Of a DNA stretch of 64,000 nucleotides, positions 1 through 63,189 are shown one piece after another. The notes beneath the pieces were generated by a model that worked only from the letters and a program-made list of their open reading frames with translations, was not told the DNA's origin and searched no databases. The stretch is from the IMG/VR virus record IMGVR_UViG_3300046513_000221, positions 199,414-263,413 of that record. One strand, given 5' to 3'. Position 1 is the stretch's first letter, and every line of letters starts with the position of its first letter. The position numbers and the translations under genes are program-made.

Positions 1-2
1 GC

Positions 3-626
3 TTCATCCAAGGCGTCGAGCAGATCGTCCGTGGATCCTTCGAGTACTCGAATTTCATCAAGTACCTGAAGACCGAGGCCAAGCTCACGTACTGCGATGT
101 GCTGACGGGCCTGAACGAGGACATCATGAAGGATCTCAGCCTTGAGATGCATCACTACCCGTTCACCCTGTACGACATCACAGAGACGGTGCTGATGAAG
201 CACCTGCTGAACAACATGGACTTCACCCGGCTGAGTATCGCCAACGAGGTGATGGACCTACACTTCTCCTTGCAGGTCGGGATCATTCCCCTGACTCTGA
301 CCGTCCACCAGCTGGCGCACAGCGGCGGGATCATCGCGGATCTGGACAACATCTTCGGCAACTACACGAAGTTCGCCGAGGACTACGAGCTTTTCATCCC
401 CGAACCTGCAATGACGAGGCTGAAGGTCTACGAGTCCAAGAGCAAGAACAAGGCTCTGCTCAAGAACACCAATCGCAACACGCTGGAATTCAACCCAGGC
501 CTGTTCGTCATCGACTACGAGCCTACCTCCGGCGATCCGGAAGTTGACCAGTGGGAGAAGGGCAAAAAGCCGCCACCTTGGGATCCAGTAGCGGCCTTCG
601 GTGAAGACACATCCTATGGAGATTGA
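3..626 (+). CDS. Conserved jumbo-phage protein with His-rich HNH-like motifs (5' end outside window)
   Basis: Frame open from window edge (FIQGVEQIVRGSFEY...); motifs EMHHYPFTL and LTVHQLAH; genome-typical codon usage. Confidence 0.6.
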   Translation, partial: FIQGVEQIVRGSFEYSNFIKYLKTEAKLTYCDVLTGLNEDIMKDLSLEMHHYPFTLYDITETVLMKHLLNNMDFTRLSIANEVMDLHFSLQVGIIPLTLTVHQLAHSGGIIADLDNIFGNYTKFAEDYELFIPEPAMTRLKVYESKSKNKALLKNTNRNTLEFNPGLFVIDYEPTSGDPEVDQWEKGKKPPPWDPVAAFGEDTSYGD

Positions 627-627
627 T

Positions 628-870
628 ATGAACGAACAGCAAGTACGAAGGGAATTGGCGGCACAGGTCGCCGCCGGGACCATCAGCGCGTGCGCCTGTA
701 TGGGTGCCGTGTACGGGGAACCGCACTGCCCTTGCAAAATGAAGCAACTCGGTCTCCCCAGCTCACCGGCGCACATCGCCGCCAACGAGAAGGCGAACGA
801 AGACCTCAAGAAGCTCTTCGGCCCCGGTGGCGTATTTCATCGACCCGCTCCCGCTCCAGAAAGTACTTGA
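628..870 (+). CDS. Small hypothetical protein with CAC...HCPC putative metal-binding motif
   Basis: GGAG RBS before ATG 628; 3' end overlaps the convergent glycosylase gene. Confidence 0.55.
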   Translation: MNEQQVRRELAAQVAAGTISACACMGAVYGEPHCPCKMKQLGLPSSPAHIAANEKANEDLKKLFGPGGVFHRPAPAPEST

Positions 871-1276
871 GCATGTGGTCCTCCGGAGCGATTTCCTGAT
901 ACCGCATCCCGAGAACGAAGATGCAGTAGGACTCCATAGCGTAGTTGCCGACCTGCGGTAGCTTCATGACGGACTCGAACGAGTGCCAATCCTCTGCTTC
1001 CGAATAGGCTCTCGACAGGGTTCTGATAGCCTGAGTCCTGACCACTCCGAAACCCAGCGGCTTGAGCAGGGTGTAGACCTCCTCGTCGGAGGCCAGTACA
1101 AGAAAGTCCTCCGGACTGGGGAACCTTCTGAATAACTCGACAGCGATAGGCTTCGCCACGCTGCCTCTTGCCCGGCGCACTAGAGTGGCGCAGACGAGAA
1201 CCTTCCAAGGATCGTTTGCGTACTCCTCCTGAACCAGCCGGTAACCTTCAGGTACGATATCAGTTCTAGTTGACAT
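806..1276 (-). CDS. MBD4-like HhH-GPD mismatch (U:G/T:G) DNA glycosylase
   Basis: LVQE..DPWKVLV, FPSPE, LLKPLG, LPQVGNYAMESYCIF, PEDH parallel the MBD4 glycosylase domain (LVQE..DPWKLL, LLKPLG, GIGKYGNDSYRIF, PEDH). Confidence 0.85.
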   Translation of the reverse strand: MSTRTDIVPEGYRLVQEEYANDPWKVLVCATLVRRARGSVAKPIAVELFRRFPSPEDFLVLASDEEVYTLLKPLGFGVVRTQAIRTLSRAYSEAEDWHSFESVMKLPQVGNYAMESYCIFVLGMRYQEIAPEDHMLKYFLERERVDEIRHRGRRAS

Positions 1277-1291
1277 GGCATCGAATCCTCC

Positions 1292-1303
1292 AACAGTAGC
1301 ATA
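1292..1303 (+). promoter_or_regulatory. AR9-type late promoter AACA-N6-TA
   Basis: AACA gtagca TA just upstream of ATG 1330. Confidence 0.65.
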
Positions 1304-1329
1304 GCAATTTCATATTTGGATCACACAAA

Positions 1330-1665
1330 ATGTTCGGATTCCTCAAACGTAAGCCGGTAGCTCCACCTCCGCTTCCAACCTTCGACTTCGAGAAAGATAC
1401 CCAGTATCTCTTCTCGATGATCGCGACCTACATTGAGAGCGAGAAGTTCAAGCTCCGGATTCACCAGAAGACCCTGATGACGGACAACGACATCACGGAG
1501 ATCTCCGTGGCGCTGCTCACCAGCGTCATCGAGTCCATCGCGGAGCCGTATCGCCGCATGCTCACCAAGTACATTCCCGATGAGAAGATCGACGACTTCA
1601 TCGCCGAGATCATCATCCGCAACATGGTGGAGGCAGGTATCACCATCAACCAATCGACAGTGTAA
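1330..1665 (+). CDS. Hypothetical protein
   Basis: 111 aa ORF, typical codon usage, downstream of late promoter. Confidence 0.7.
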   Translation: MFGFLKRKPVAPPPLPTFDFEKDTQYLFSMIATYIESEKFKLRIHQKTLMTDNDITEISVALLTSVIESIAEPYRRMLTKYIPDEKIDDFIAEIIIRNMVEAGITINQSTV

Positions 1666-1674
1666 GGAGAAAGC

Positions 1675-1983
1675 ATGGACAACCAGCATCAAAAGATTTC
1701 GGGTTACAGGGACTTCGGTCAGGAGACCATCGATAAGATCAACGAGATCAAGGGTCTGGGCAACGGCCAACTGAAGCCCCTGATCGACCGTCTGATAGCC
1801 GACCACGGCGCAGAGCTGCACCAGACGATCGGTATGCAGACCTCGATGACCGAGGAAGAGTACCTCGCCAAGATGGCCGAATTGGCCGACGCAAGCAAAA
1901 ACATGGGAACGGCACAGGAACATCTGCGTATCGGTTTCATGATGCTGATCCGGGTGGTCGCCCGTCCGAAGACCGAGTACTAA
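1675..1983 (+). CDS. acb2: Anti-CBASS protein Acb2 (cyclic oligonucleotide sponge)
   Basis: N-terminus MDNQHQKISGYRDFGQETIDKINEIK and C-terminus GFMMLIRVVARP closely match Acb2 ([20 protein letters not shown]...GMMAIIRAIAQP); AGGAG RBS. Confidence 0.9.
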   Translation: MDNQHQKISGYRDFGQETIDKINEIKGLGNGQLKPLIDRLIADHGAELHQTIGMQTSMTEEEYLAKMAELADASKNMGTAQEHLRIGFMMLIRVVARPKTEY

Positions 1984-1990
1984 GATCAAC

Positions 1991-2066
1991 GGGGCGTAAC
2001 TGTCACATACGGGAGACAGCGGGTGAAATACTCGGGCGCAGGGTTAAACTCCCTCACGCTCCACCA
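1991..2066 (+). ncRNA. tRNA-like RNA with alanine acceptor identity and atypical anticodon arm
   Basis: 76 nt; acceptor stem GGGGCGT/ACGCTCC with G3-U70, A73, encoded CCA; D arm CTGTC/GACAG; T arm AGGG-TTAAACT-CCCT at canonical positions; central arm CGGGT-GAAAT-ACTCG. Confidence 0.7.
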
Positions 2067-2111
2067 AAAAAGAAAGCACCTTGACACCGAAATGGCGTCA
2101 AGGTGCGTTTC
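2066..2111. terminator. Bidirectional intrinsic terminator
   Basis: GCACCTTGAC/GTCAAGGTGC hairpin flanked by A- and T-rich tails between convergent units. Confidence 0.7.
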
Positions 2112-2879
2112 TTACACCAGCAGCTGAATAAGCGGCTGAAGGAAGTTCTCGTAGTTGTAGCTGATGTCCAGCTCCTCAAGCTGATCATCCTGAATGTACT
2201 CGAAGTACACGTCGTTGCTCGCCAGCCGCAGCTTGAGCTTGTACTGGTAGATGGCGTTCAGTTCCCGGTAGTAGTCGTGAGCCAGCTCCAGACTGACGTA
2301 GCAGTGACGTAATTCTTGGAGATAGTCGAAGATGAACTGCTTGTCCTTGTACTCGTAGAACTTCATGAGAATCTTGATCTCTTCGATCAGATTGTCCTTG
2401 GCCTCCACGTCGTGATCCAGCCCCTTGAACCAGAACCTGTCGGTCTTGGCGTGCAGGAAGAACTCCTTCTTCCGCAGGAGCATGTATGACGATGCCGTCT
2501 CCCGGAGCGTGAAGACCACGTTGTCGAACTCCAGCACGGTCGGCTTCTGGTCGTACATCGTGATCGAGTCCTTCTTGACGCTGAGGATCCGGTCCTCGTC
2601 GATCTCGTTGTGCTCCCTGAAGAGCCTCATGTGCTCGATGAATCCGTCGTTCAGCTGCTTGACGAACTCCTTGTTGTCCCTCGCGTACTTACCGATCTCG
2701 ATGTGACGCTGCTTCTTGGTCATCCCGGATATCTGCTTGACGAACTTCTCGGGCAGCAGTCCGTTGTTCTTCGATATCGACCAGCCCCCCTCGATGATGT
2801 CGTACTCCTGAATGCTCTTGTTCTTCAGAACGAGAATGTCCTCGTTCAGGTAGACGAGTGAGTTCACGCTTCCAGACAT
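2112..2879 (-). CDS. Putative split DNA polymerase (PolB palm-related) subunit
   Basis: EYDI...ILSVKKDSI motifs resemble palm acidic motifs of the short polymerase-like protein of AR9/phiKZ-related phages. Confidence 0.45.
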   Translation of the reverse strand: MSGSVNSLVYLNEDILVLKNKSIQEYDIIEGGWSISKNNGLLPEKFVKQISGMTKKQRHIEIGKYARDNKEFVKQLNDGFIEHMRLFREHNEIDEDRILSVKKDSITMYDQKPTVLEFDNVVFTLRETASSYMLLRKKEFFLHAKTDRFWFKGLDHDVEAKDNLIEEIKILMKFYEYKDKQFIFDYLQELRHCYVSLELAHDYYRELNAIYQYKLKLRLASNDVYFEYIQDDQLEELDISYNYENFLQPLIQLLV

Positions 2880-2918
2880 AGTGTCTCCTCGTACAGTTGA
2901 TCTTTAGGTTTGTTTTGC

Positions 2919-2931
2919 GAATATATAATTC
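2919..2931 (+). promoter_or_regulatory. Putative early promoter core (GAATATATAATTC)
   Basis: Same ATATAT core as the sites at 19867, 25916, 40244 and 50450. Confidence 0.4.
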
Positions 2932-3040
2932 TCATGATTGCACTTGGGATGCGCATTGACATCCTTCAACATATAAATTATATATTTGTAATCGATTTCT
3001 CAATTTCCCGCACGGCGGGAGATGAATATCTGGAGAGTAA

Positions 3041-3553
3041 ATGAGTATTGCTTACTTCACGGTGCCGAACGATCAGCACCAAGTAACCAACATTGCGGCC
3101 GCGATGGATTCCCGTGATCTCGACGATCACGATATCATCAACATCGAAACGGTCAACGCCAACACTCTCGTGAAGGTATGGTTCCGCCAAGTTAAGATGG
3201 TTCCTTCCGGCGTCAAGGTCGCCGAGATTGATGTCTCGAAGGCTATGGCGTCCAACATGATCACCAATGCCGGTCAGCTGGTTGCCGCATTCGGCGCACC
3301 GCAGACCCGCTATGAGCCGCCTCCTAACCCGGACGCTCATCCGGAGACGAGCTACGACCCGGCAGGATGGACTCCGGGCGTCAAGTACGAGAAGGGTGAT
3401 AAGGTCACCCTCAACGGTGAAGTCAAGGTAATCGGCAATAGCGGTACCTCCGCAGATCTGGATCCGAAGCCAACCGTCCCAGCAACTGATGTAAATCAAG
3501 CCAAAAGCAAGATCGCACTGAAGTCGCTCCCGAACAGTAAGCACCGCCGCTAA
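3041..3553 (+). CDS. Putative virion protein with CBM5/12-like motif
   Basis: WTPGVKYEKGDKVTLNG fits W..G..Y..GD.V..NG; GGAG RBS. Confidence 0.55.
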   Translation: MSIAYFTVPNDQHQVTNIAAAMDSRDLDDHDIINIETVNANTLVKVWFRQVKMVPSGVKVAEIDVSKAMASNMITNAGQLVAAFGAPQTRYEPPPNPDAHPETSYDPAGWTPGVKYEKGDKVTLNGEVKVIGNSGTSADLDPKPTVPATDVNQAKSKIALKSLPNSKHRR

Positions 3554-3556
3554 ACG

Positions 3557-3596
3557 AAAAATGCTATATGGGTCAACAGATTCATATAGCATTTTT
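3557..3596 (+). terminator. Intrinsic terminator, overlapped by an AACA-N6-TA motif (3575-3586)
   Basis: AAAAATGCTATATG/CATATAGCATTTTT inverted repeat. Confidence 0.65.
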
Positions 3597-3640
3597 ATCG
3601 ATTTCGCGTTATAATGCAAAGATGTGGCCGAGGGTGCAAA

Positions 3641-4021
3641 ATGAGTAAACGTAAACAGAGTAAGCAAGATAAAGAAGCCTTGGAGTTGGAGCGCAAGCTC
3701 GGCGGTCTCTTGGGCTGGGTTAACATCGAGCAATCATTGGCAGTTGATGGTACCGTCATCTTCACGGGGATTGCACCGAAGAGCAGTAAGGTCAGCGTCC
3801 TCCCGCAATGGGTACGCGACTGGCGCGACTGCGGTCCTCTGCTGACTCAGGTCAGTATGATCGCGATCTACATCGACAAGGACGCCGACGAGATCGAGTG
3901 TCATGTCAATTCTCCAAACATGTCGAAGTACAATGACTTGGCACTGCGCATGGGGATCGTCGAATCCTTTATTGACGACATCGAAGAACAGAAAGAAGAA
4001 GAACCTGTATGCTCCAGCTAA
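3641..4021 (+). CDS. Hypothetical protein
   Basis: ORF with GAGGG RBS, coupled to the RNAP gene. Confidence 0.6.
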   Translation: MSKRKQSKQDKEALELERKLGGLLGWVNIEQSLAVDGTVIFTGIAPKSSKVSVLPQWVRDWRDCGPLLTQVSMIAIYIDKDADEIECHVNSPNMSKYNDLALRMGIVESFIDDIEEQKEEEPVCSS

Positions 4022-5367
4022 AACCACGTAACATCGACGATGCATTCGTCGAAGCAAATCTGATCACCAATCACGAGCCACTGAGCAGCGATGCCAAGTT
4101 CACCCTCGACGGCGTCTTCTCCGAGAAGATCTTCGGCACGATGGCGAACGGCATCGACTACTCCTGCACCTGCGGGTGCTATCAAGGCGAGTTCAACAAG
4201 GGCTACGAGTGCGAGATCTGCAACGACCCTGTCGTGTTCAAGGGTCTGGCGCTGAAGAAGGAAGGCTGGATCGATCTGGAGTACCCGATCATCCACCCGG
4301 TCTTCTACCGCTACCTGAAGAAGATCATCGGTGCGACCAATCTGCAGTCGATCATCAACTACAAGGGCAAGATCAAAGTGTCCGGCCAGCTGGACGAGGC
4401 TCCGCTGGAGTACCCGTTCCACGAGATCGGCATGATGCGTTTCATCGAGAACTTCGAGACCATCGTGGACAGCTACATCAGCCAGAAGTCCGAGAAGGCC
4501 GTCAAGCACGCCAAGGATATCGCCTTCATCGTCGAGCATCAGGAGCTTGTGTTCATCACCAAGTACCCGATCATCAACAGCCGCCTCCGTCCGGCGACCA
4601 TCCTGAACGGCGAGTTCAGCTTCGACGCGATCAACAACCTGTACAACGGCATCATCCGTGGCTCCGGTCTGCTGCGCGATCTGACCGAGATCGAGAAGAA
4701 CGACATGAACATCCTGTCTCTGGTCTACAAGAACCAGATGCTGGTGAACGAGTTGTTCGATACCGTCATCGACACGCTGTCCAACAAGGACGGCTACATC
4801 CGTGGCTCCCTGATGGGATGCCGCCTGAACTGGTCGAGCCGCAACGTCATCACGCCGCTGACCGGCAAGTACGGTATGGACCAGTGCGTCATGCCTTACC
4901 TGACCGCGATCGAGCTGCTGAAGCCGCTGATCATGCGCAAGCTGCAGAAGCTGAAGAAGATCAGCATCGCGGCGGCGCACAAGATCTGGTTCGAGGCCAA
5001 TCTGGTCTACAACAAGCTCGTGCACAGCATCATGCGCGAGCTGGTGAAAGAAAACAACATCCGGATCCTGCTGAACCGTAATCCGACGATCTCGGTAGGC
5101 TCTATCCTGATGCTGGAGGTAGCCGATATCAAGGAGGACATGGAAGACGTCACCTTGAGCATCTCCAACCTGATCCTGCCGTCCATCTCCGGCGACTACG
5201 ACGGAGACGTTCTGAACATCGTCATGCTGTTCTCCAAGGCGTTCGTCGATCTGTTCCGTCCATTCATGCCGAGCAACCTCGTCATCGACACCGACAGCGG
5301 CGAGTTCAACGGCAATTTCGCACCGTTCAAGGACGTGGCTATCGGCCTCCAGTCCATCGTGAACTAG
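4009..5367 (+). CDS. Multisubunit RNA polymerase beta' N-terminal subunit (catalytic; probably non-virion RNAP)
   Basis: GVFSEKIFG, Zn finger CTCG..CEIC, LRP, SSRNVI, LLNRNPTI, catalytic GDYDGD. Confidence 0.92.
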   Translation: MLQLKPRNIDDAFVEANLITNHEPLSSDAKFTLDGVFSEKIFGTMANGIDYSCTCGCYQGEFNKGYECEICNDPVVFKGLALKKEGWIDLEYPIIHPVFYRYLKKIIGATNLQSIINYKGKIKVSGQLDEAPLEYPFHEIGMMRFIENFETIVDSYISQKSEKAVKHAKDIAFIVEHQELVFITKYPIINSRLRPATILNGEFSFDAINNLYNGIIRGSGLLRDLTEIEKNDMNILSLVYKNQMLVNELFDTVIDTLSNKDGYIRGSLMGCRLNWSSRNVITPLTGKYGMDQCVMPYLTAIELLKPLIMRKLQKLKKISIAAAHKIWFEANLVYNKLVHSIMRELVKENNIRILLNRNPTISVGSILMLEVADIKEDMEDVTLSISNLILPSISGDYDGDVLNIVMLFSKAFVDLFRPFMPSNLVIDTDSGEFNGNFAPFKDVAIGLQSIVN

Positions 5368-5375
5368 GAGGTAAA

Positions 5376-5651
5376 ATGTGCCCTCTGCCAACAAAGCGTG
5401 AACACGTCTTTCTGGCCGGGGCGCTCCTCTTCGCTATTCTGTACTCGACTGCGATCGAGGCTATGGCGGGGTGGAGCGCCGAAGTGGATATCCTGAAAAC
5501 CGCGTGTAACGATAACGACGGTCTGAAGGAGATCTACCGAGACTGGAAGAACAAAGGTCGTCCGATCGTCGCCGAGTGCTACGACGGTACGAAGTGGCGA
5601 ATATTCAATGGGAAGGTAGTACCGTATGCCAAGCAAGAAAAAACTCCGTAG
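5376..5651 (+). CDS. Hypothetical protein with N-terminal TM/signal segment
   Basis: GGAGG RBS; hydrophobic segment. Confidence 0.55.
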   Translation: MCPLPTKREHVFLAGALLFAILYSTAIEAMAGWSAEVDILKTACNDNDGLKEIYRDWKNKGRPIVAECYDGTKWRIFNGKVVPYAKQEKTP

Positions 5652-5937
5652 CATCACGGACATCGAGTGGCTGCAGCTCAAGACCGGGCGCGGTCAGGAT
5701 GCCACCGGCTATCCATGTCACGACTACGGTGACGGCGGGTTCTTCTACTTCTGGCCGTGGGGAACCCAACCCGAGATCAACATTATCCACAAGATTGGTG
5801 CGAGCTGTCCTGTCAAAGCAGCTAAGGCGTTCCTGGAACACTACGTCAAGAACCCGTCCGGTGACATGACGACGCACTACCCACCAGTAAAGAAATCCAA
5901 GAATGCAAATCAAGGGAAAACCAAAAAAGGTCGTTGA
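5626..5937 (+). CDS. Hypothetical protein
   Basis: Overlapping small-gene run. Confidence 0.5.
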   Translation: MPSKKKLRSITDIEWLQLKTGRGQDATGYPCHDYGDGGFFYFWPWGTQPEINIIHKIGASCPVKAAKAFLEHYVKNPSGDMTTHYPPVKKSKNANQGKTKKGR

Positions 5938-6130
5938 CTGGCTCCTGAAGCACTTCGACCTGAAGGACGTGATCGTTATCGGCGCGATCGCGTTTGTCTA
6001 CATCAATGGCATCTACGTCCAGAAGCAACAGAGACTGGAGATGGAGGAAAGCTACCTGCGCGGCTATGCCGATGGCGTGAAGTTCTCCCTCAACCCCGGC
6101 ACGGATAACCAACCGAAAGGAAAGAAATAG
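5903..6130 (+). CDS. Small membrane protein
   Basis: Single TM segment (VIVIGAIAFVYI). Confidence 0.55.
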   Translation: MQIKGKPKKVVDWLLKHFDLKDVIVIGAIAFVYINGIYVQKQQRLEMEESYLRGYADGVKFSLNPGTDNQPKGKK

Positions 6131-60514: not shown

Positions 60515-63189
60515 TAGCGGATCTTCGTCATGAAGTCCGCGAACTTGGCCTGATCGGGACTCGTAAAGAAGTCCTTCTCGGCCCGTACGTAGTTGCCGGA
60601 GAGCGAGTTGTTGATGAGCAGGATCTGACGACGGTTCACGCCGTTGTAGTTCATGCCTACGTGGATCCAGCGCCACTCCTTGCCGTTGCCCTCCAGAATC
60701 ACCTGATCGAAGTCGAGGCCGGACTGAGTCGCGATCCAGTGGAACGGCTCGCACAGGGAATCCCCCAAGGCACTGGTGAGCGCCAAGTCAGCGGCCATGG
60801 CCCACATGTGGCTGGACTTCGCAGCGCCCCCGGTAGGGACGGTGTAGCGGTACCAGCTGTTCATCTTGCCGCCGCCCCCGATGCACTTGCCGTACTGCTG
60901 GAAGATCGGGTCAAGGAGCTTGGTGGCAAACTTCTGGGCGTAGCAGTACAGATCGAAGTCCTGACAGATGTAGTTACCGCGAACGGGATCGACCGAGTCC
61001 TTGGTCGTGTAGATGTCGAGGAACTTGACCGTGTCCGACATCATGTCGCTCGGCTTCAGCTCCTTGGGCACCACATCCCCGTTATAGTCGGTATTCCCTG
61101 CGAATTTCGGGAGATATGGTCCGCCCTTCTTCTCGACCTTCAGGAGTGGTGGCGACGCGGAAAGCTTACCGCTTCCCGACGTGTTTCCACCCGTCTTCCC
61201 CTTGTAGGCGGCGTAGTCCTCCCGCATCTGACGGACGCGCTCCGAGTAGGTCGGGCGCTTCATGGAGACACCGTTGACCGTGACGTTCGGGATGTTGGTC
61301 AGGTACAGGAAGCACTGGAGGCTCACGCCCTGCTTAGGCTGCATTGTACCCTCGCTCAGGAACCTGAACTGCATGCCCTTGAGCCTGTACTCACCCGAGT
61401 AGGCAGCATCGTCGTTGTTGAAGAACTTCAAGACGTACCGCATGTTGGAGTTCAGCATGTAGGCATCGACGTCGTTGCACTGGATCGCGATGCTCAGAGC
61501 CTTCTCCCTGATCTCGTCCTGCAGCTGGGTCAGGTTGTACGGGTTGTCGTTCGCGCCCCAGTACGTACGCTGGGGACTGTCCTCGTTCTCCGAGATGTCG
61601 CACTCCGAGCTGAACGAGTCGTCCTGAGACGATCCCATCACACGGACGGACTCACCGTCCAGAATGCGAGCGCTGTTCCGCTTGTCGATCTGGTAGGCCT
61701 CCTGCGTCCGCACCAGACACAGACGACTCTCCTTGTCGACGAACGACCCGGACTCGTACTCACCGACGTTCACCCGAGAGACCTTGTCCACGACCTCGAT
61801 CAAGACCTGCTCGATCCCTCCCTTGCCGAAGGCGTGACCGCCCTTGTCCGATACAGTTACTAACGTGACCATGGAGGAAGTCTTGGACGACTCGTCGTAG
61901 ACCTCCCCGACCGACGACATCATCATGCGGATGCCGGTGGAGTAGACGCCGTACTTCTCCTGAAGCTGGCGGATGTTGTCGGCGAGTGAGCCGGGATCTA
62001 GGATCACCTGCTCGTACTCCCTGATATTGTCCGGAGGGGTCACGGTGAACGTGACCCTCTCCCGGTCAGACACCTCCTGCTTGATCTGCTCGTTGACCGC
62101 ATCCGTGAGGAGGGATGTTATGACGTCGAGCATGGTGGCGTTCCTGTACACCTTGCTTCGGACTTTGGAGTTGATGTCAACGTTCCTTTTAGACACTAGG
62201 TCGAGTTTTAGAGGGTGGGAAGGCAAACCAGCCAGCGGCGAACCCTCTGCGGCTCCGTCAGTGTTGAGCAGTGGGTCGAGCGCCACCATCTCAGTGTTGT
62301 CCAGCACCTTCATGCGGACGATGTGGTCGTCCGGGTCTCCGTGTCCCCTCACGTACTTGTCCACGCTCATGTAGAAGCGGAGGGTCTCGAAGTGGTCCTT
62401 GAAGTCGCGGTAGGTGAGCTCGTTGACCGTCAGCATCATACTGTAGAGCGGCATCACGAGGGCGTCGTACTCCATATTCTGCACGAACTCGTTGATGTAC
62501 TTGGTCAGATCGACCGACACGTTGTCGGGACGGACGTAGTAGAGGCTGAAGTCGTACACCCACTGCTGCATGGTCCGGGCCGGTACCGTGGGGTTCTTGT
62601 CCACCTTGTCTGGTTCGGGTTCGACCAGGACCGGCTTGGATGGCGTTATGGTCTCGGCCACCGTGGGGGTGTCGAGGATCTCCTGCTTGCACTTCTTGAC
62701 CTTGGGGATGATGTTGTCCTTCAGCTCCCGGACGTACTCCCTGAGAACCTCCCCGAGCATGGACGGGTCGTCGCCCAGCACGTTGTCGTACTGCGAGAGG
62801 TCTTGGATGAGGGTGTCGGCGGGGTCGAGGATGCGGGACATCGTGGTCCGGATGCTGGCCCAGAGCTGGATGGTACTCATGGCCTTGGACCTGATCTTCG
62901 CCTTCATGCCGGTGTCCATGCCACCGAGGTTGTAGGTGTTGTCCTGGATCTGTGCGGCCTCCGCCATGTTCTTCGAGTAGACGTAGGTGGTGTCCGCGTA
63001 CTTCTCCCGGAGCTTGCCTAGGTCGGCGAAGACCCTGTTGAGGCGCTGGCTGTCGTCGAACGCCTTGCCGGAGGTCGGGGCGATGGACGACGATGGCTGG
63101 TCGCTGCGGTCCCCCGGAACGGACGAGCCGTCCTCGGTCAGGGACACGTTGAGGAAGACGAACTCGTCCCTTATCGTTCTTTGAGTCAT
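60514..63189 (-). CDS. Tail/baseplate hub protein with C-terminal peptidase M15 (peptidoglycan endopeptidase)
   Basis: NSWYR, SSHMWAMAAD, FDQVILE, WIHV; AGGAG RBS before ATG 63189. Confidence 0.75.
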   Translation of the reverse strand: MTQRTIRDEFVFLNVSLTEDGSSVPGDRSDQPSSSIAPTSGKAFDDSQRLNRVFADLGKLREKYADTTYVYSKNMAEAAQIQDNTYNLGGMDTGMKAKIRSKAMSTIQLWASIRTTMSRILDPADTLIQDLSQYDNVLGDDPSMLGEVLREYVRELKDNIIPKVKKCKQEILDTPTVAETITPSKPVLVEPEPDKVDKNPTVPARTMQQWVYDFSLYYVRPDNVSVDLTKYINEFVQNMEYDALVMPLYSMMLTVNELTYRDFKDHFETLRFYMSVDKYVRGHGDPDDHIVRMKVLDNTEMVALDPLLNTDGAAEGSPLAGLPSHPLKLDLVSKRNVDINSKVRSKVYRNATMLDVITSLLTDAVNEQIKQEVSDRERVTFTVTPPDNIREYEQVILDPGSLADNIRQLQEKYGVYSTGIRMMMSSVGEVYDESSKTSSMVTLVTVSDKGGHAFGKGGIEQVLIEVVDKVSRVNVGEYESGSFVDKESRLCLVRTQEAYQIDKRNSARILDGESVRVMGSSQDDSFSSECDISENEDSPQRTYWGANDNPYNLTQLQDEIREKALSIAIQCNDVDAYMLNSNMRYVLKFFNNDDAAYSGEYRLKGMQFRFLSEGTMQPKQGVSLQCFLYLTNIPNVTVNGVSMKRPTYSERVRQMREDYAAYKGKTGGNTSGSGKLSASPPLLKVEKKGGPYLPKFAGNTDYNGDVVPKELKPSDMMSDTVKFLDIYTTKDSVDPVRGNYICQDFDLYCYAQKFATKLLDPIFQQYGKCIGGGGKMNSWYRYTVPTGGAAKSSHMWAMAADLALTSALGDSLCEPFHWIATQSGLDFDQVILEGNGKEWRWIHVGMNYNGVNRRQILLINNSLSGNYVRAEKDFFTSPDQAKFADFMTKIR

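What the first reader, a model, noticed from the sequence alone, without database searches (positions are those of the whole stretch)
1991..2066. Alanine-identity tRNA mimic with a broken anticodon arm directly behind acb2
Seen: exactly 76 nt, starting 8 nt after the acb2 stop. It has a 7-bp acceptor stem (GGGGCGT/ACGCTCC) with G3-U70, A73 and encoded CCA, and G53-T54-T55...A58...C61 at canonical positions. Several parts are non-canonical: a 5-bp D stem, A8 and A56, a C49-C65 mismatch, and a central arm (CGGGT-GAAAT-ACTCG) with a 5-nt loop, no U33 and no Ala anticodon. Known: G3-U70 plus A73 suffice for AlaRS charging regardless of anticodon, and the GGGGC...CTCCACCA ends resemble tmRNA. Inference: an aminoacylatable, non-decoding RNA. 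It could act as a decoy for tRNA-targeting defence toxins or anticodon nucleases, as an EF-Tu/SmpB sponge, or as an Ala donor, forming a protein+RNA counter-defence unit with Acb2.
Basis: partly seen in the sequence, partly recalled or inferred. Interest (0 to 1): 0.82.

Follow-up and report, generated by a model that had tools for sequence, protein, structure and literature searches.

The report
Alanine-type tRNA look-alike without anticodon
The 76-base element behind acb2 belongs to a conserved, apparently phage-only family of tRNA-shaped RNAs that keep every signal for alanine charging but have no usable anticodon. It is neither a chance fold nor a decayed tRNA gene, and its job is still unknown.

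Summary
Window 1991-2066 (+) folds as a cloverleaf with G3:U70, A73 and an encoded CCA. ARAGORN and Rfam do not call it.

The fold alone is weak evidence (z -1.68). The decisive evidence is about 19 distinct homologues in uncultivated phage contigs. They share the same four-way cloverleaf, with 14 of 24 pairs showing compensatory changes. They also share an invariant G1-C72, G2-C71, G3:U70 and U7-A66, and a nearly invariant 20-nt D arm. The central hairpin varies and cannot decode.

Homologues nearly always sit inside large phage tRNA arrays, a few bases from real tRNAs. A normal tRNA-Ala is often adjacent, so the element is not a decayed tRNA-Ala. None of the 23 D-arm pattern matches in the bacterial and archaeal representative genomes was a member, and no cultured-phage record matched beyond the T arm and acceptor end.

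No other member lies next to acb2. In this phiR1-37-like jumbo phage, acb2 plus the RNA is an insertion in front of a bidirectional terminator.

The element is closer to tRNA-Ala than to the tmRNA tRNA-like domain. It has a D stem and a four-way junction, whereas the phage DS6A "TLD-only" RNA has a three-way junction.

Best reading: a processed, alanine-charged, non-decoding tRNA mimic acting in trans. The exact target is inferred, not shown. The window copy is a truncated-arm variant with a bulged T stem.

The parts
1991..2066 (+). tRNA-like RNA gene, 76 nt, alanine identity, no anticodon. It belongs to the truncated-arm class of a conserved phage family.
   Evidence: Sequence and fold. Family model R2 scores it 85 bits.
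1991..1997 (+). Acceptor stem, 5' strand. G1, G2 and G3 are invariant in the family.
   Evidence: Pairs with 2056-2062. G3 (1993) with U70 (2060) is kept in 17 of 17 sequences. Positions 4-6 covary.
2000..2019 (+). D arm: 5-bp stem plus 10-nt loop. This is the signature of the family (CUGYC-ACAUNNGGGA-GRCAG). The loop ends in G18 G19 G20 A21, as in tRNA-Ala.
   Evidence: Nearly invariant in all members. As a search pattern it returned 14 of 14 family members in viral contigs.
2020..2034 (+). Central hairpin in place of the anticodon arm: 5 bp with a 5-nt loop, or 6 bp with a 3-nt loop. No U33 and no 7-nt loop.
   Evidence: In the family this arm varies in length and sequence, with compensatory changes at every pair.
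2035..2055 (+). Variable region (2035-2038) and T arm (2039-2055). The T loop is UUAAACU (A56). A C/C mismatch, or one-base bulge, lies at 2039/2055.
   Evidence: The window C:C is the only cell at that T-stem pair not scored as paired among 17 sequences. A56 is shared with L101, L062, L066, L108, L157, L163, L172 and L182. The other members have C56.
2056..2066 (+). Acceptor stem 3' strand (2056-2062, U70 at 2060), discriminator A73 (2063) and encoded CCA (2064-2066).
   Evidence: A73 is present in all but one member, and CCA is encoded in all but one.
1675..1983 (+). acb2 (cyclic-oligonucleotide sponge, anti-CBASS). It is the upstream gene and is probably transcribed together with the RNA.
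   Evidence: PDB 8H2J/8IXZ 'p26', E 4e-10 over the full length. 33-35% identity to PaMx41, PaMx33 and PaP2. The Pfam Acb2_Tad1 hit is below its cut-off.
2076..2106 (.). 13-bp hairpin: a bidirectional intrinsic terminator shared by the acb2-RNA unit and the convergent gene 2112-2879(-).
   Evidence: The equivalent site in phiR1-37 is annotated as a bidirectional terminator.
1330..1665 (+). Homologue of phiR1-37 g277. This is the left anchor showing that acb2 plus the RNA is an insertion.
   Evidence: BLASTP E 3e-12 to g277. In phiR1-37, g277 is followed 13 nt later by the terminator.
2112..2879 (-). Homologue of phiR1-37 g276. This is the right anchor of the insertion.
   Evidence: 37% identity, E 6e-54.

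Best explanation
The element is a working copy of a conserved, apparently phage-restricted family of tRNA-Ala-derived RNAs. These RNAs keep the tRNA body and the complete alanine identity set but have a plain hairpin where the anticodon loop should be.

In this phiR1-37-like jumbo phage the RNA was inserted together with acb2 in front of a bidirectional terminator. It is most likely transcribed as the tail of the acb2 message. Inferred steps: the host tRNA-processing enzymes cut it out, RNase P at the 5' side and trimming to the encoded CCA at the 3' side. Host AlaRS then charges it with alanine, because AlaRS reads G3:U70, A73, G2-C71, G4-C69 and G20 and ignores the anticodon.

It cannot decode. 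Its effect must therefore come from the charged acceptor/T-arm half and the invariant D arm. On this reading it acts in trans as a mimic or competitor of alanyl-tRNA-Ala and of tmRNA, which carries the same G3:U70 and A73 identity and, in E. coli as recalled from memory, the same T loop. The targets would be factors that read the tRNA body, such as AlaRS, EF-Tu, the trans-translation machinery, or an unknown protein that binds the D arm.

Shown here: the sequence, the fold, family conservation and covariation, tRNA-array context, absence from the bacterial genome matches examined, and insertion relative to phiR1-37. Inferred: expression, processing, charging and the target.
For: - True homologues were found by pattern plus covariance-model searches: 14 of 14 viral-contig matches and 10 of 28 metagenome matches are members.
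- The cloverleaf is supported by covariation.
- G1-C72, G2-C71, G3:U70 and U7-A66 are invariant while pairs 4-6 covary. A G:U wobble kept in 17 diverged sequences points to selection for AlaRS recognition (identity set in PMC9976931).
- Members lie 2-16 nt from bona fide tRNAs on the same strand inside arrays of up to 33 tRNAs. This implies the same transcription and processing.
- A normal tRNA-Ala(UGC) coexists, directly adjacent in L154 and L155.
- In the sampled loci, the best-scoring true tRNAs against the family model are tRNA-Ala, at 38.8-39 bits.
- 0 of 23 pattern matches in about 185,000 bacterial and archaeal genomes is a member.
- Among phage tRNA-like RNAs that ARAGORN does not call, 11 of 22 carry G3:U70, against 0 of 9 called tRNAs.
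- The window copy is followed 9 nt later by a strong terminator hairpin and is retained unchanged in a 98.4%-identical strain from two other samples.
Against: - There is no expression or charging data, and no RNA run could be listed.
- The window copy deviates from the family consensus. It has a shortened central arm, has lost the conserved GUAACUC loop of the majority class, and has a one-base bulge in the T stem. It could be a weakened copy.
- No partner protein recurs next to the family.
- The invariant D arm is not explained by AlaRS or EF-Tu recognition.
- If SmpB were the target, the D stem and the anticodon-like arm would occupy the space SmpB fills on tmRNA (established structural knowledge, not tested here).
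- The family is rare: about 19 distinct sequences in very large collections.
Confidence: 0.55

Rival explanations
1. A TLD-only mini-tmRNA. It would bind SmpB (and AlaRS/EF-Tu) and so block or replace trans-translation, as reported for the TLD-only RNA of mycobacteriophage DS6A.
For: - It has G3:U70, A73 and CCA, and most members have the T loop UUCAACU, which is the E. coli tmRNA T loop as I recall it (sequences).
- Window 2032-2071 is 82% identical to ssrA 3' ends.
- There is precedent: DS6A encodes little more than a tmRNA TLD, and a similar molecule inhibits tmRNA in E. coli (PMC4131195, PMC11915505).
- By my recollection, large-tRNA-array mycobacteriophages such as Bxz1 also carry a tmRNA. 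PMC4131195 lists the phages that have ssrA.
Against: - The family has a 5-bp D stem and a four-way junction. The DS6A RNA (L148:28478-28560) has the single-stranded GG..UCGAC D-loop analogue and a three-way junction.
- No Rfam tmRNA model matches.
- The family model scores DS6A at 21.9 bits, no better than unrelated tRNAs.
- The reported inhibition did not need chargeability, so SmpB titration alone would not explain an invariant G3:U70.
Confidence: 0.15
2. A decoy or sponge for tRNA-directed anti-phage enzymes, such as acceptor-end or body-recognising nucleases, nucleotidyltransferase or pyrophosphokinase toxins, or acetyltransferases. In this phage it would sit in a counter-defence islet with Acb2.
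For: - In the window it lies 7 nt behind a bona fide anti-CBASS gene, in an accessory insertion absent from phiR1-37.
- Phage tRNA arrays are themselves proposed to counter tRNA-targeting defences (PMC10264068).
- A protein-RNA anti-defence complex that uses t(m)RNA fragments exists: AcrIIIA1 (PMC11662646).
Against: - The acb2 linkage is unique to this phage.
- An anticodon nuclease would have nothing to recognise in a 3-5 nt loop.
- No defence enzyme specific for tRNA-Ala bodies is known to me.
- A decoy needs high abundance, which is unknown.
Confidence: 0.13
3. In this particular phage the RNA is mainly a cis-acting 3' module of the acb2 transcript. It would serve as an RNase P cut site and a stable end, as with tRNA punctuation or MALAT1/mascRNA. 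Alternatively, it is a degenerating copy carried along with the insertion.
For: - It lies between the stop codon and the terminator.
- The window copy has a bulged T stem, a shortened arm, and has lost the conserved loop of the majority class.
- The window holds no tRNA genes into which it would be integrated.
Against: - The acceptor stem, full Ala identity set, D arm and T loop are intact.
- Other truncated-arm members (L163, L157, L101, L156) keep the same design in unrelated phages. The short arm is therefore a recurring variant rather than private decay.
- Processing alone would not need G3:U70.
Confidence: 0.1
4. An alanine donor for a non-ribosomal aminoacyl transfer, kept out of translation. 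This would resemble the non-proteinogenic tRNA-Gly that feeds Fem transferases, or the tRNA-dependent lipid and peptide transferases.
For: Invariant alanine identity combined with inability to decode. The invariant D arm could be the handle for a dedicated transferase.
Against: No transferase-like gene recurs next to family members. Whole genomes could not be surveyed.
Confidence: 0.05
5. A decoding tRNA after all. Majority-class members have canonical arm geometry and a 7-nt loop G-U-A-A-C-U-C, so they could read GUU as alanine.
For: In standard numbering the majority class fits a 26:44 pair, a 5-bp stem and a 7-nt loop with U33 (derived).
Against: - G32 and C38 can pair, leaving a 5-nt loop.
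- Position 37 is U, and two members have A33.
- The window and four other members have 3-7 nt A-rich loops on shorter stems.
- ARAGORN and the Rfam tRNA model reject them.
Confidence: 0.02

Closest known systems
Bacterial and phage tRNA-Ala
   Same: 7-bp acceptor stem with G1-C72, G2-C71, G3:U70 and (in the window) G4-C69. A73 and CCA. D loop ending in G18 G19 G20 A21. 5-bp T stem and 7-nt T loop. Four-way cloverleaf. The best-scoring true tRNAs against the family model in the sampled loci. Same position in tRNA arrays.
   Different: No 7-nt anticodon loop and no UGC or GGC anticodon. 5-bp D stem with position 14 paired. Position 8 is not U. A56 in many members. Not detected by ARAGORN or the Rfam tRNA model. 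It coexists with a normal tRNA-Ala rather than replacing it.
tmRNA tRNA-like domain, and the 'TLD-only' RNA of mycobacteriophage DS6A (PMC4131195, PMC11915505)
   Same: Alanine identity without an anticodon. A similar T arm and 3' end. Phage-encoded and non-coding. A plausible link to translation rescue or its inhibition.
   Different: The tmRNA and DS6A RNAs have no D stem, carry the GG..UCGAC D-loop analogue, and form a three-way junction through helix P2. The family is a four-way cloverleaf with its own invariant D arm. No sequence or model similarity beyond that of any tRNA.
Aminoacylatable tRNA-like structures at the 3' ends of plant RNA viruses (TYMV, BMV, TMV). From general knowledge.
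   Same: A viral tRNA mimic at the 3' end of a message that is charged but does not decode. This matches the window's placement behind acb2.
   Different: Those are part of an RNA genome, use pseudoknotted acceptor arms, have valine, tyrosine or histidine identity, and act in cis. This family is normally a free-standing gene in tRNA arrays.
T4 stable RNAs species 1 and 2 (rnaC, rnaD)
   Same: Small stable RNAs of unknown function at the end of a phage tRNA cluster. rnaC carries a T-arm-like hairpin.
   Different: Longer (139 and 119 nt as annotated). No G3:U70 acceptor stem or family D arm was evident by eye, so no homology is apparent.
Non-proteinogenic tRNA-Gly of staphylococci (donors for Fem transferases). 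From general knowledge.
   Same: Charged tRNAs diverted from the ribosome.
   Different: Those keep a normal anticodon loop and avoid EF-Tu through T-arm changes. No linked transferase is seen here.

Membership tests
Canonical tRNA | Cloverleaf with 7-bp acceptor stem, D arm, T arm and 3' CCA | tested here: met
   MFE fold. Consensus fold with covariation.
Canonical tRNA | 7-nt anticodon loop with U33 and a purine at position 37 | tested here: not met
   The window loop is 3-5 nt. The family majority loop has G32-C38 and U37.
Canonical tRNA | Recognised by tRNA detectors (ARAGORN, Rfam RF00005) | tested here: not met
   Neighbouring true tRNAs score 39-54 bits in the same scans.
Canonical tRNA | Core tertiary positions U8, unpaired A14 and C56 | tested here: not met
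   Position 8 is A in the window and any base in the family. The base at position 14 of the 5' strand is paired in a fifth D-stem pair. A56 is present in the window.
Alanine acceptor (substrate of bacterial AlaRS) | G3:U70, A73, G2-C71, G4-C69 and G20, with no anticodon requirement (PMC9976931) | tested here: met
   All are present in the window sequence. G3:U70 is kept in 17 of 17 family members.
Alanine acceptor (substrate of bacterial AlaRS) | Actual alanylation | not testable with these tools
   Needs an in vitro charging assay or acid-gel northern.
tmRNA / TLD-only tmRNA | Acceptor stem with G3:U70 and a T arm | tested here: met
   Weak blastn similarity to ssrA 3' ends.
tmRNA / TLD-only tmRNA | No D stem, a single-stranded D-loop analogue (GG..UCGAC), and helix P2 forming a three-way junction | tested here: not met
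   The family has a conserved 5-bp D stem and a four-way junction. DS6A shows the tmRNA pattern.
tmRNA / TLD-only tmRNA | Match to tmRNA covariance models, or similarity to DS6A | tested here: not met
   No Rfam tmRNA hit at E<=10. DS6A scores 21.9 bits with the family model.
tmRNA / TLD-only tmRNA | SmpB binding | not testable with these tools
   Needs a binding assay.
New phage family (here: Ala-type anticodon-less tRNA-like RNA) | D-arm signature CUGYC-ACAUNNGGGA-GRCAG between a G3:U70 acceptor stem and a T arm | tested here: met
   Window 2000-2019 matches. The model built from the window alone retrieves members at 42-70 bits.
New phage family (here: Ala-type anticodon-less tRNA-like RNA) | Location inside a phage tRNA array | tested here: not met
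   The window has no tRNA genes, and the copy sits behind acb2. L152 and L157 are also outside arrays.
Acb2-linked counter-defence module | Recurrent linkage of acb2 and the RNA | tested here: not met
   No RNA match at 30 other acb2 loci. No acb2 in 18 family loci.

The most novel reading that the evidence does not exclude
Unrelated phages share a dedicated, horizontally spread effector RNA: an alanine-charged tRNA that is built not to decode. Its invariant D arm would recruit a specific factor. It would then reprogram a translation-linked process during infection, for example by blocking or replacing tmRNA-mediated tagging, or by neutralising an acceptor-end-directed defence toxin. In this jumbo phage it has been moved out of the tRNA array into a counter-defence islet next to acb2.
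Probability: 0.3. Interest if true: 0.85.

Novelty: new variant of a known kind. Interest (0 to 1): 0.7.

Why it matters
Phage tRNA arrays are usually read as codon supplements or as replacements for tRNAs destroyed by host defences. A conserved member of these arrays that keeps alanine identity but cannot decode does not fit either reading, so the arrays appear to hold something other than translation adaptors.

Only one comparable case is on record, the TLD-only tmRNA of phage DS6A, and that RNA has a different architecture. The family is missed by ARAGORN and Rfam, so it goes unannotated. A covariance model like the one built here would let it be annotated.

Its small size and clear identity elements make the hypotheses directly testable: charging, EF-Tu and SmpB binding, and effects on trans-translation and on tRNA-targeting defences. 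For this window specifically, it shows that the RNA behind acb2 is a transplanted family member, not a curiosity created by decay.

Tried and rejected
- ARAGORN at default and at 95-70% thresholds did not call the element.
- Rfam at gathering threshold on the whole window, and at E<=10 on 1900-2200, gave only chance hits: rliE, RybB and sR23.
- Megablast of 1-6000 against cultured phages gave no match.
- Single-protein locus searches with Acb2, the g276 homologue and the RNAP subunit returned only the window's own contig or distant acb2 loci.
- The first strict DNA pattern found only the window's own contig.
- The model search of 30 acb2 loci found no homologue.
- Read laying on three rhizosphere runs showed a 98.4% variant with no change at 1956-2306. 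This is uninformative for covariation.
- No RNA-seq run was listed.
- A scan for DS6A's TLD by acceptor pairing plus CCA failed because DS6A does not encode CCA. The family model then located it.
- One viral scan was wasted on a pattern whose gap lower bound (30) excluded the family itself, whose gap is 25-29. It returned ordinary tRNA-Ala genes. The corrected pattern added no new member.
- Nickievirus phages, relatives of the L101 phage, lack the RNA in the regions checked. The end of the nickie record was not examined.
- Mini-ORF idea (AUG in the D loop, in-frame UAA in the central loop): rejected. The AUG is not conserved (AUA-U/C/A-GG variants) and the body is fully structured.
- Decoding tRNA (anticodon AAC): rejected, as set out under the rival explanations.
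- attP or host-gene fragment: rejected. Both halves are present, and none of the 23 pattern matches in bacterial genomes is a member.
- T4 rnaC and rnaD show no homology by eye.

Full report
OBSERVATION. It has a 7-bp acceptor stem with G3 (1993) opposite U70 (2060), A73, and an encoded CCA. It has a 5-bp D stem with a 10-nt loop, a short central hairpin (2020-2034) with no 7-nt loop, the T loop UUAAACU, and a C/C mismatch at 2039/2055. Seven bases separate it from the acb2 stop codon (1981-1983).

RNAfold returns the cloverleaf as the minimum-energy structure. The z-score is only -1.68, and 12 of 200 shuffles fold as well. ARAGORN does not call it, even at 70% thresholds. Rfam has no tRNA or tmRNA match. 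On its own, the element could not be told from chance.

CONTEXT. The window is part of a 263-kb uncultivated viral contig from a rhizosphere metagenome. Its closest cultured relative is Yersinia jumbo phage phiR1-37, with 50% amino-acid identity in the split RNA polymerase beta' subunit.

Gene order is conserved with phiR1-37. Window 1330-1665 corresponds to g277, and 2112-2879(-) corresponds to g276. In phiR1-37, g277 is followed 13 nt later by a bidirectional terminator and then by g276. The window has acb2 (1675-1983) and the RNA inserted between the g277 homologue and that terminator, a 13-bp hairpin at 2076-2106.

The upstream gene really is Acb2. It matches PDB 8H2J/8IXZ 'p26' at E 4e-10 over its full length. 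A 98.4%-identical strain in two other rhizosphere samples carries the RNA unchanged. At that divergence this says nothing either way.

HOMOLOGUES. A scan of viral contigs for the T loop plus CCACCA, filtered with a covariance model built from the window sequence alone, gave clear homologues at 54-68 bits. They revealed a nearly invariant D arm, CUGYC-ACAUNNGGGA-GRCAG.

That D arm was then used as a search pattern:
- In viral contigs, 14 of 14 matches are family members.
- In metagenome contigs, 10 of 28 are members.
- In one genome for each of about 185,000 bacterial and archaeal species, 0 of 23 are members.

blastn of one family member (L153) against 50,697 GenBank phage records matched only the T arm and acceptor end of ordinary tRNAs. 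A second, looser pattern added no member with a different D stem. In all there are about 19 distinct sequences, and every one comes from an uncultivated phage or a metagenome contig.

STRUCTURE AND CONSERVATION. MAFFT plus RNAalifold on 17 full-length members predicts the same four-way cloverleaf independently. It has 24 pairs, 14 of them with compensatory double changes. On the model-fitted alignment, 393 of 393 cells are paired. The covariation score is 0.612, against 0.189 +/- 0.021 for shuffles (0 of 500 reach it) and at most 0.12 for slid controls.

G1-C72, G2-C71, G3:U70 and U7-A66 never vary, while pairs 4-6 covary. A73 is present in all but one member, and an encoded CCA in all but one. 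The D loop ends in G18 G19 G20 A21, as in tRNA-Ala. The window therefore has the complete bacterial alanine identity set: A73, G2-C71, G3:U70, G4-C69 and G20, with no anticodon element (PMC9976931).

The central arm comes in two forms (derived):
- The majority has canonical geometry, with a 26:44 pair, 5 bp, and the loop G-U/A-A-A-C-U-C. G32 and C38 in that loop can pair.
- A minority has shorter stems and A-rich loops of 3-7 nt. These are the window, L163, L157, L101 and L156.

A56 is a common variant and occurs in both forms. Against its nearest relatives (L101, L163), the window's C49-C65 mismatch is a one-base insertion. It is the only cell at that T-stem pair not scored as paired in the alignment.

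WHERE THE FAMILY LIVES. Most homologues lie inside phage tRNA arrays of up to 33 genes. They are on the same strand as bona fide tRNAs and 2-16 nt from them. A normal tRNA-Ala(UGC) is present in the same arrays in L150, L153, L154 and L155. In L154 and L155 it is directly adjacent.

The family RNA is much more conserved between phages than their tRNA-Ala genes are.

The carriers are unrelated phages. One is a Nickievirus-like Pseudomonas phage. One is a siphovirus with a capsid protein like those of Klebsiella and Citrobacter phages. There is also a 185-kb contig and this phiR1-37-like jumbo phage. No acb2 lies in any of 18 family loci, and no family RNA lies at 30 other acb2 loci. No protein family recurs beside the RNA.

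tRNA-Ala OR tmRNA? The 3' half resembles ssrA 3' ends (82% over 40 nt) and the tRNA-Ala of T5-like phages, but these blastn matches are marginal on their own (E about 0.5-2). The majority T loop, UUCAACU, is the E. coli tmRNA T loop as I recall it.

The literature records one phage 'TLD-only' tmRNA, in mycobacteriophage DS6A. A similar molecule inhibits tmRNA in E. coli (PMC4131195, PMC11915505). I located the DS6A RNA at L148:28478-28560. It has the tmRNA hallmarks: no D stem, the GG..UCGAC D-loop analogue, and a three-way junction. It scores only 21.9 bits with the family model, whereas true tRNA-Ala genes score 38.8-39 bits.

The family is therefore best described as tRNA-Ala-derived. It works somewhat like a tmRNA tRNA-like domain, being alanine-charged and non-decoding, but it is not a member of that family.

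MECHANISM. Several points are shown: the fold is real and under selection, the alanine identity set is under selection, the RNA has the gene context of a tRNA, and it cannot decode. The rest is inferred:
- It is transcribed with acb2 and released by RNase P and 3' trimming.
- It is charged by host AlaRS.
- It acts in trans through its charged acceptor/T half and its invariant D arm.

My preferred target class is the machinery that handles Ala-tRNA-Ala and tmRNA, namely AlaRS, EF-Tu and stalled ribosomes. A pure SmpB sponge is less likely. The D stem and central arm occupy the space SmpB fills on tmRNA, and SmpB titration would not need G3:U70.

The rivals are a decoy for tRNA-directed defence enzymes, an alanine donor, and, for this copy, a cis-acting 3' module or weakened relic. 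Co-insertion into an accessory site remains a fact for this phage.

NOVELTY. Seven completed full-text searches found no description of this family. Rfam 15 has no model for it. It may lie among the unnamed tRNA-like candidates of a large IMG/VR survey (PMC10690425), but it is not described there.

A quick survey suggests it is one of several kinds of uncalled tRNA-like RNAs in phages. Half of them (11 of 22) carry G3:U70, against 0 of 9 ordinary tRNAs with the same T loop.

LIMITS. There are no expression data. Whole genomes of the carriers were not available, so co-occurring proteins could not be tested. The scans used fixed patterns, so diverged members are missed. The window copy is an atypical member.

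Noticed in passing
window 1669-1729: A second strain, in runs X2 and X3, differs at about 16 clustered positions plus a compensating 1-nt deletion and insertion in the ribosome-binding site and first ~18 codons of acb2. The rest of the 2.2 kb differs only at scattered sites, and 1956-2306 is identical. This looks like a recombination patch or fast evolution of the Acb2 N-terminus.
   Followed up: no
L101:5320-5459: Directly upstream of the L101 family member lies a 5' half of a tRNA-Ala-like gene (5407-5443: acceptor strand, D arm, anticodon-stem strand). A further piece upstream of that holds the complementary anticodon-stem strand and a degenerate T arm. 13-nt and 9-nt repeats link the two pieces. 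The Rfam tRNA model bridges the 5' half to the family member's 3' half at 32.5 bits. This may be a rearranged or permuted tRNA-Ala. Unexplained.
   Followed up: partly
L042:10752-10830, L045:7323-7401, L056:3467-3546, L098:1106-1185 (also in L096 and L106): Other phage RNAs of 79-89 nt with G3:U70, A73, CCA and a UUAAANU T loop, but no D stem. They have a three-way junction with a P2-like helix, which resembles the DS6A 'TLD-only' design. ARAGORN does not call them.
   Followed up: partly
L051:7307-7378 (= L070:339-410); L047:5756-5848, L080:1929-2020 and a related 93-nt RNA in L073; ~91-95-nt RNAs in L048 and L094: Further uncalled tRNA-like RNAs inside or near phage tRNA arrays. They have G3:C70 (not alanine type), compact D arms or long inserts, and no anticodon loop. 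Non-decoding tRNA look-alikes seem to be a wider phenomenon in phages.
   Followed up: no
L154:9161-9235 and L056:4912-4987: ARAGORN calls tRNAs with anticodon CTA (labelled Pyl), that is, amber-suppressor-type tRNAs. They occur in two phage contigs, one with a family RNA (L154) and one with another uncalled tRNA-like RNA (L056). This may indicate stop-codon reassignment.
   Followed up: no
L152:2144-3076: A tyrosine recombinase/integrase gene lies about 0.5 kb upstream of the L152 family member, which is not in a tRNA array. I did not check whether this marks an integration module.
   Followed up: no
window 4009-5367: N-terminal piece of a split multisubunit RNA polymerase beta' subunit, 50% identical to phiR1-37 g274. 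With the gene order, this identifies the window as a phiR1-37-like jumbo phage. phiR1-37 is said to carry deoxyuridine DNA, from general knowledge.
   Followed up: partly
window 61147-61243 (-): Weak match to the family model (13.9 bits, E 0.57) that ends in CCACCA. The fold is poor and it is probably chance.
   Followed up: partly
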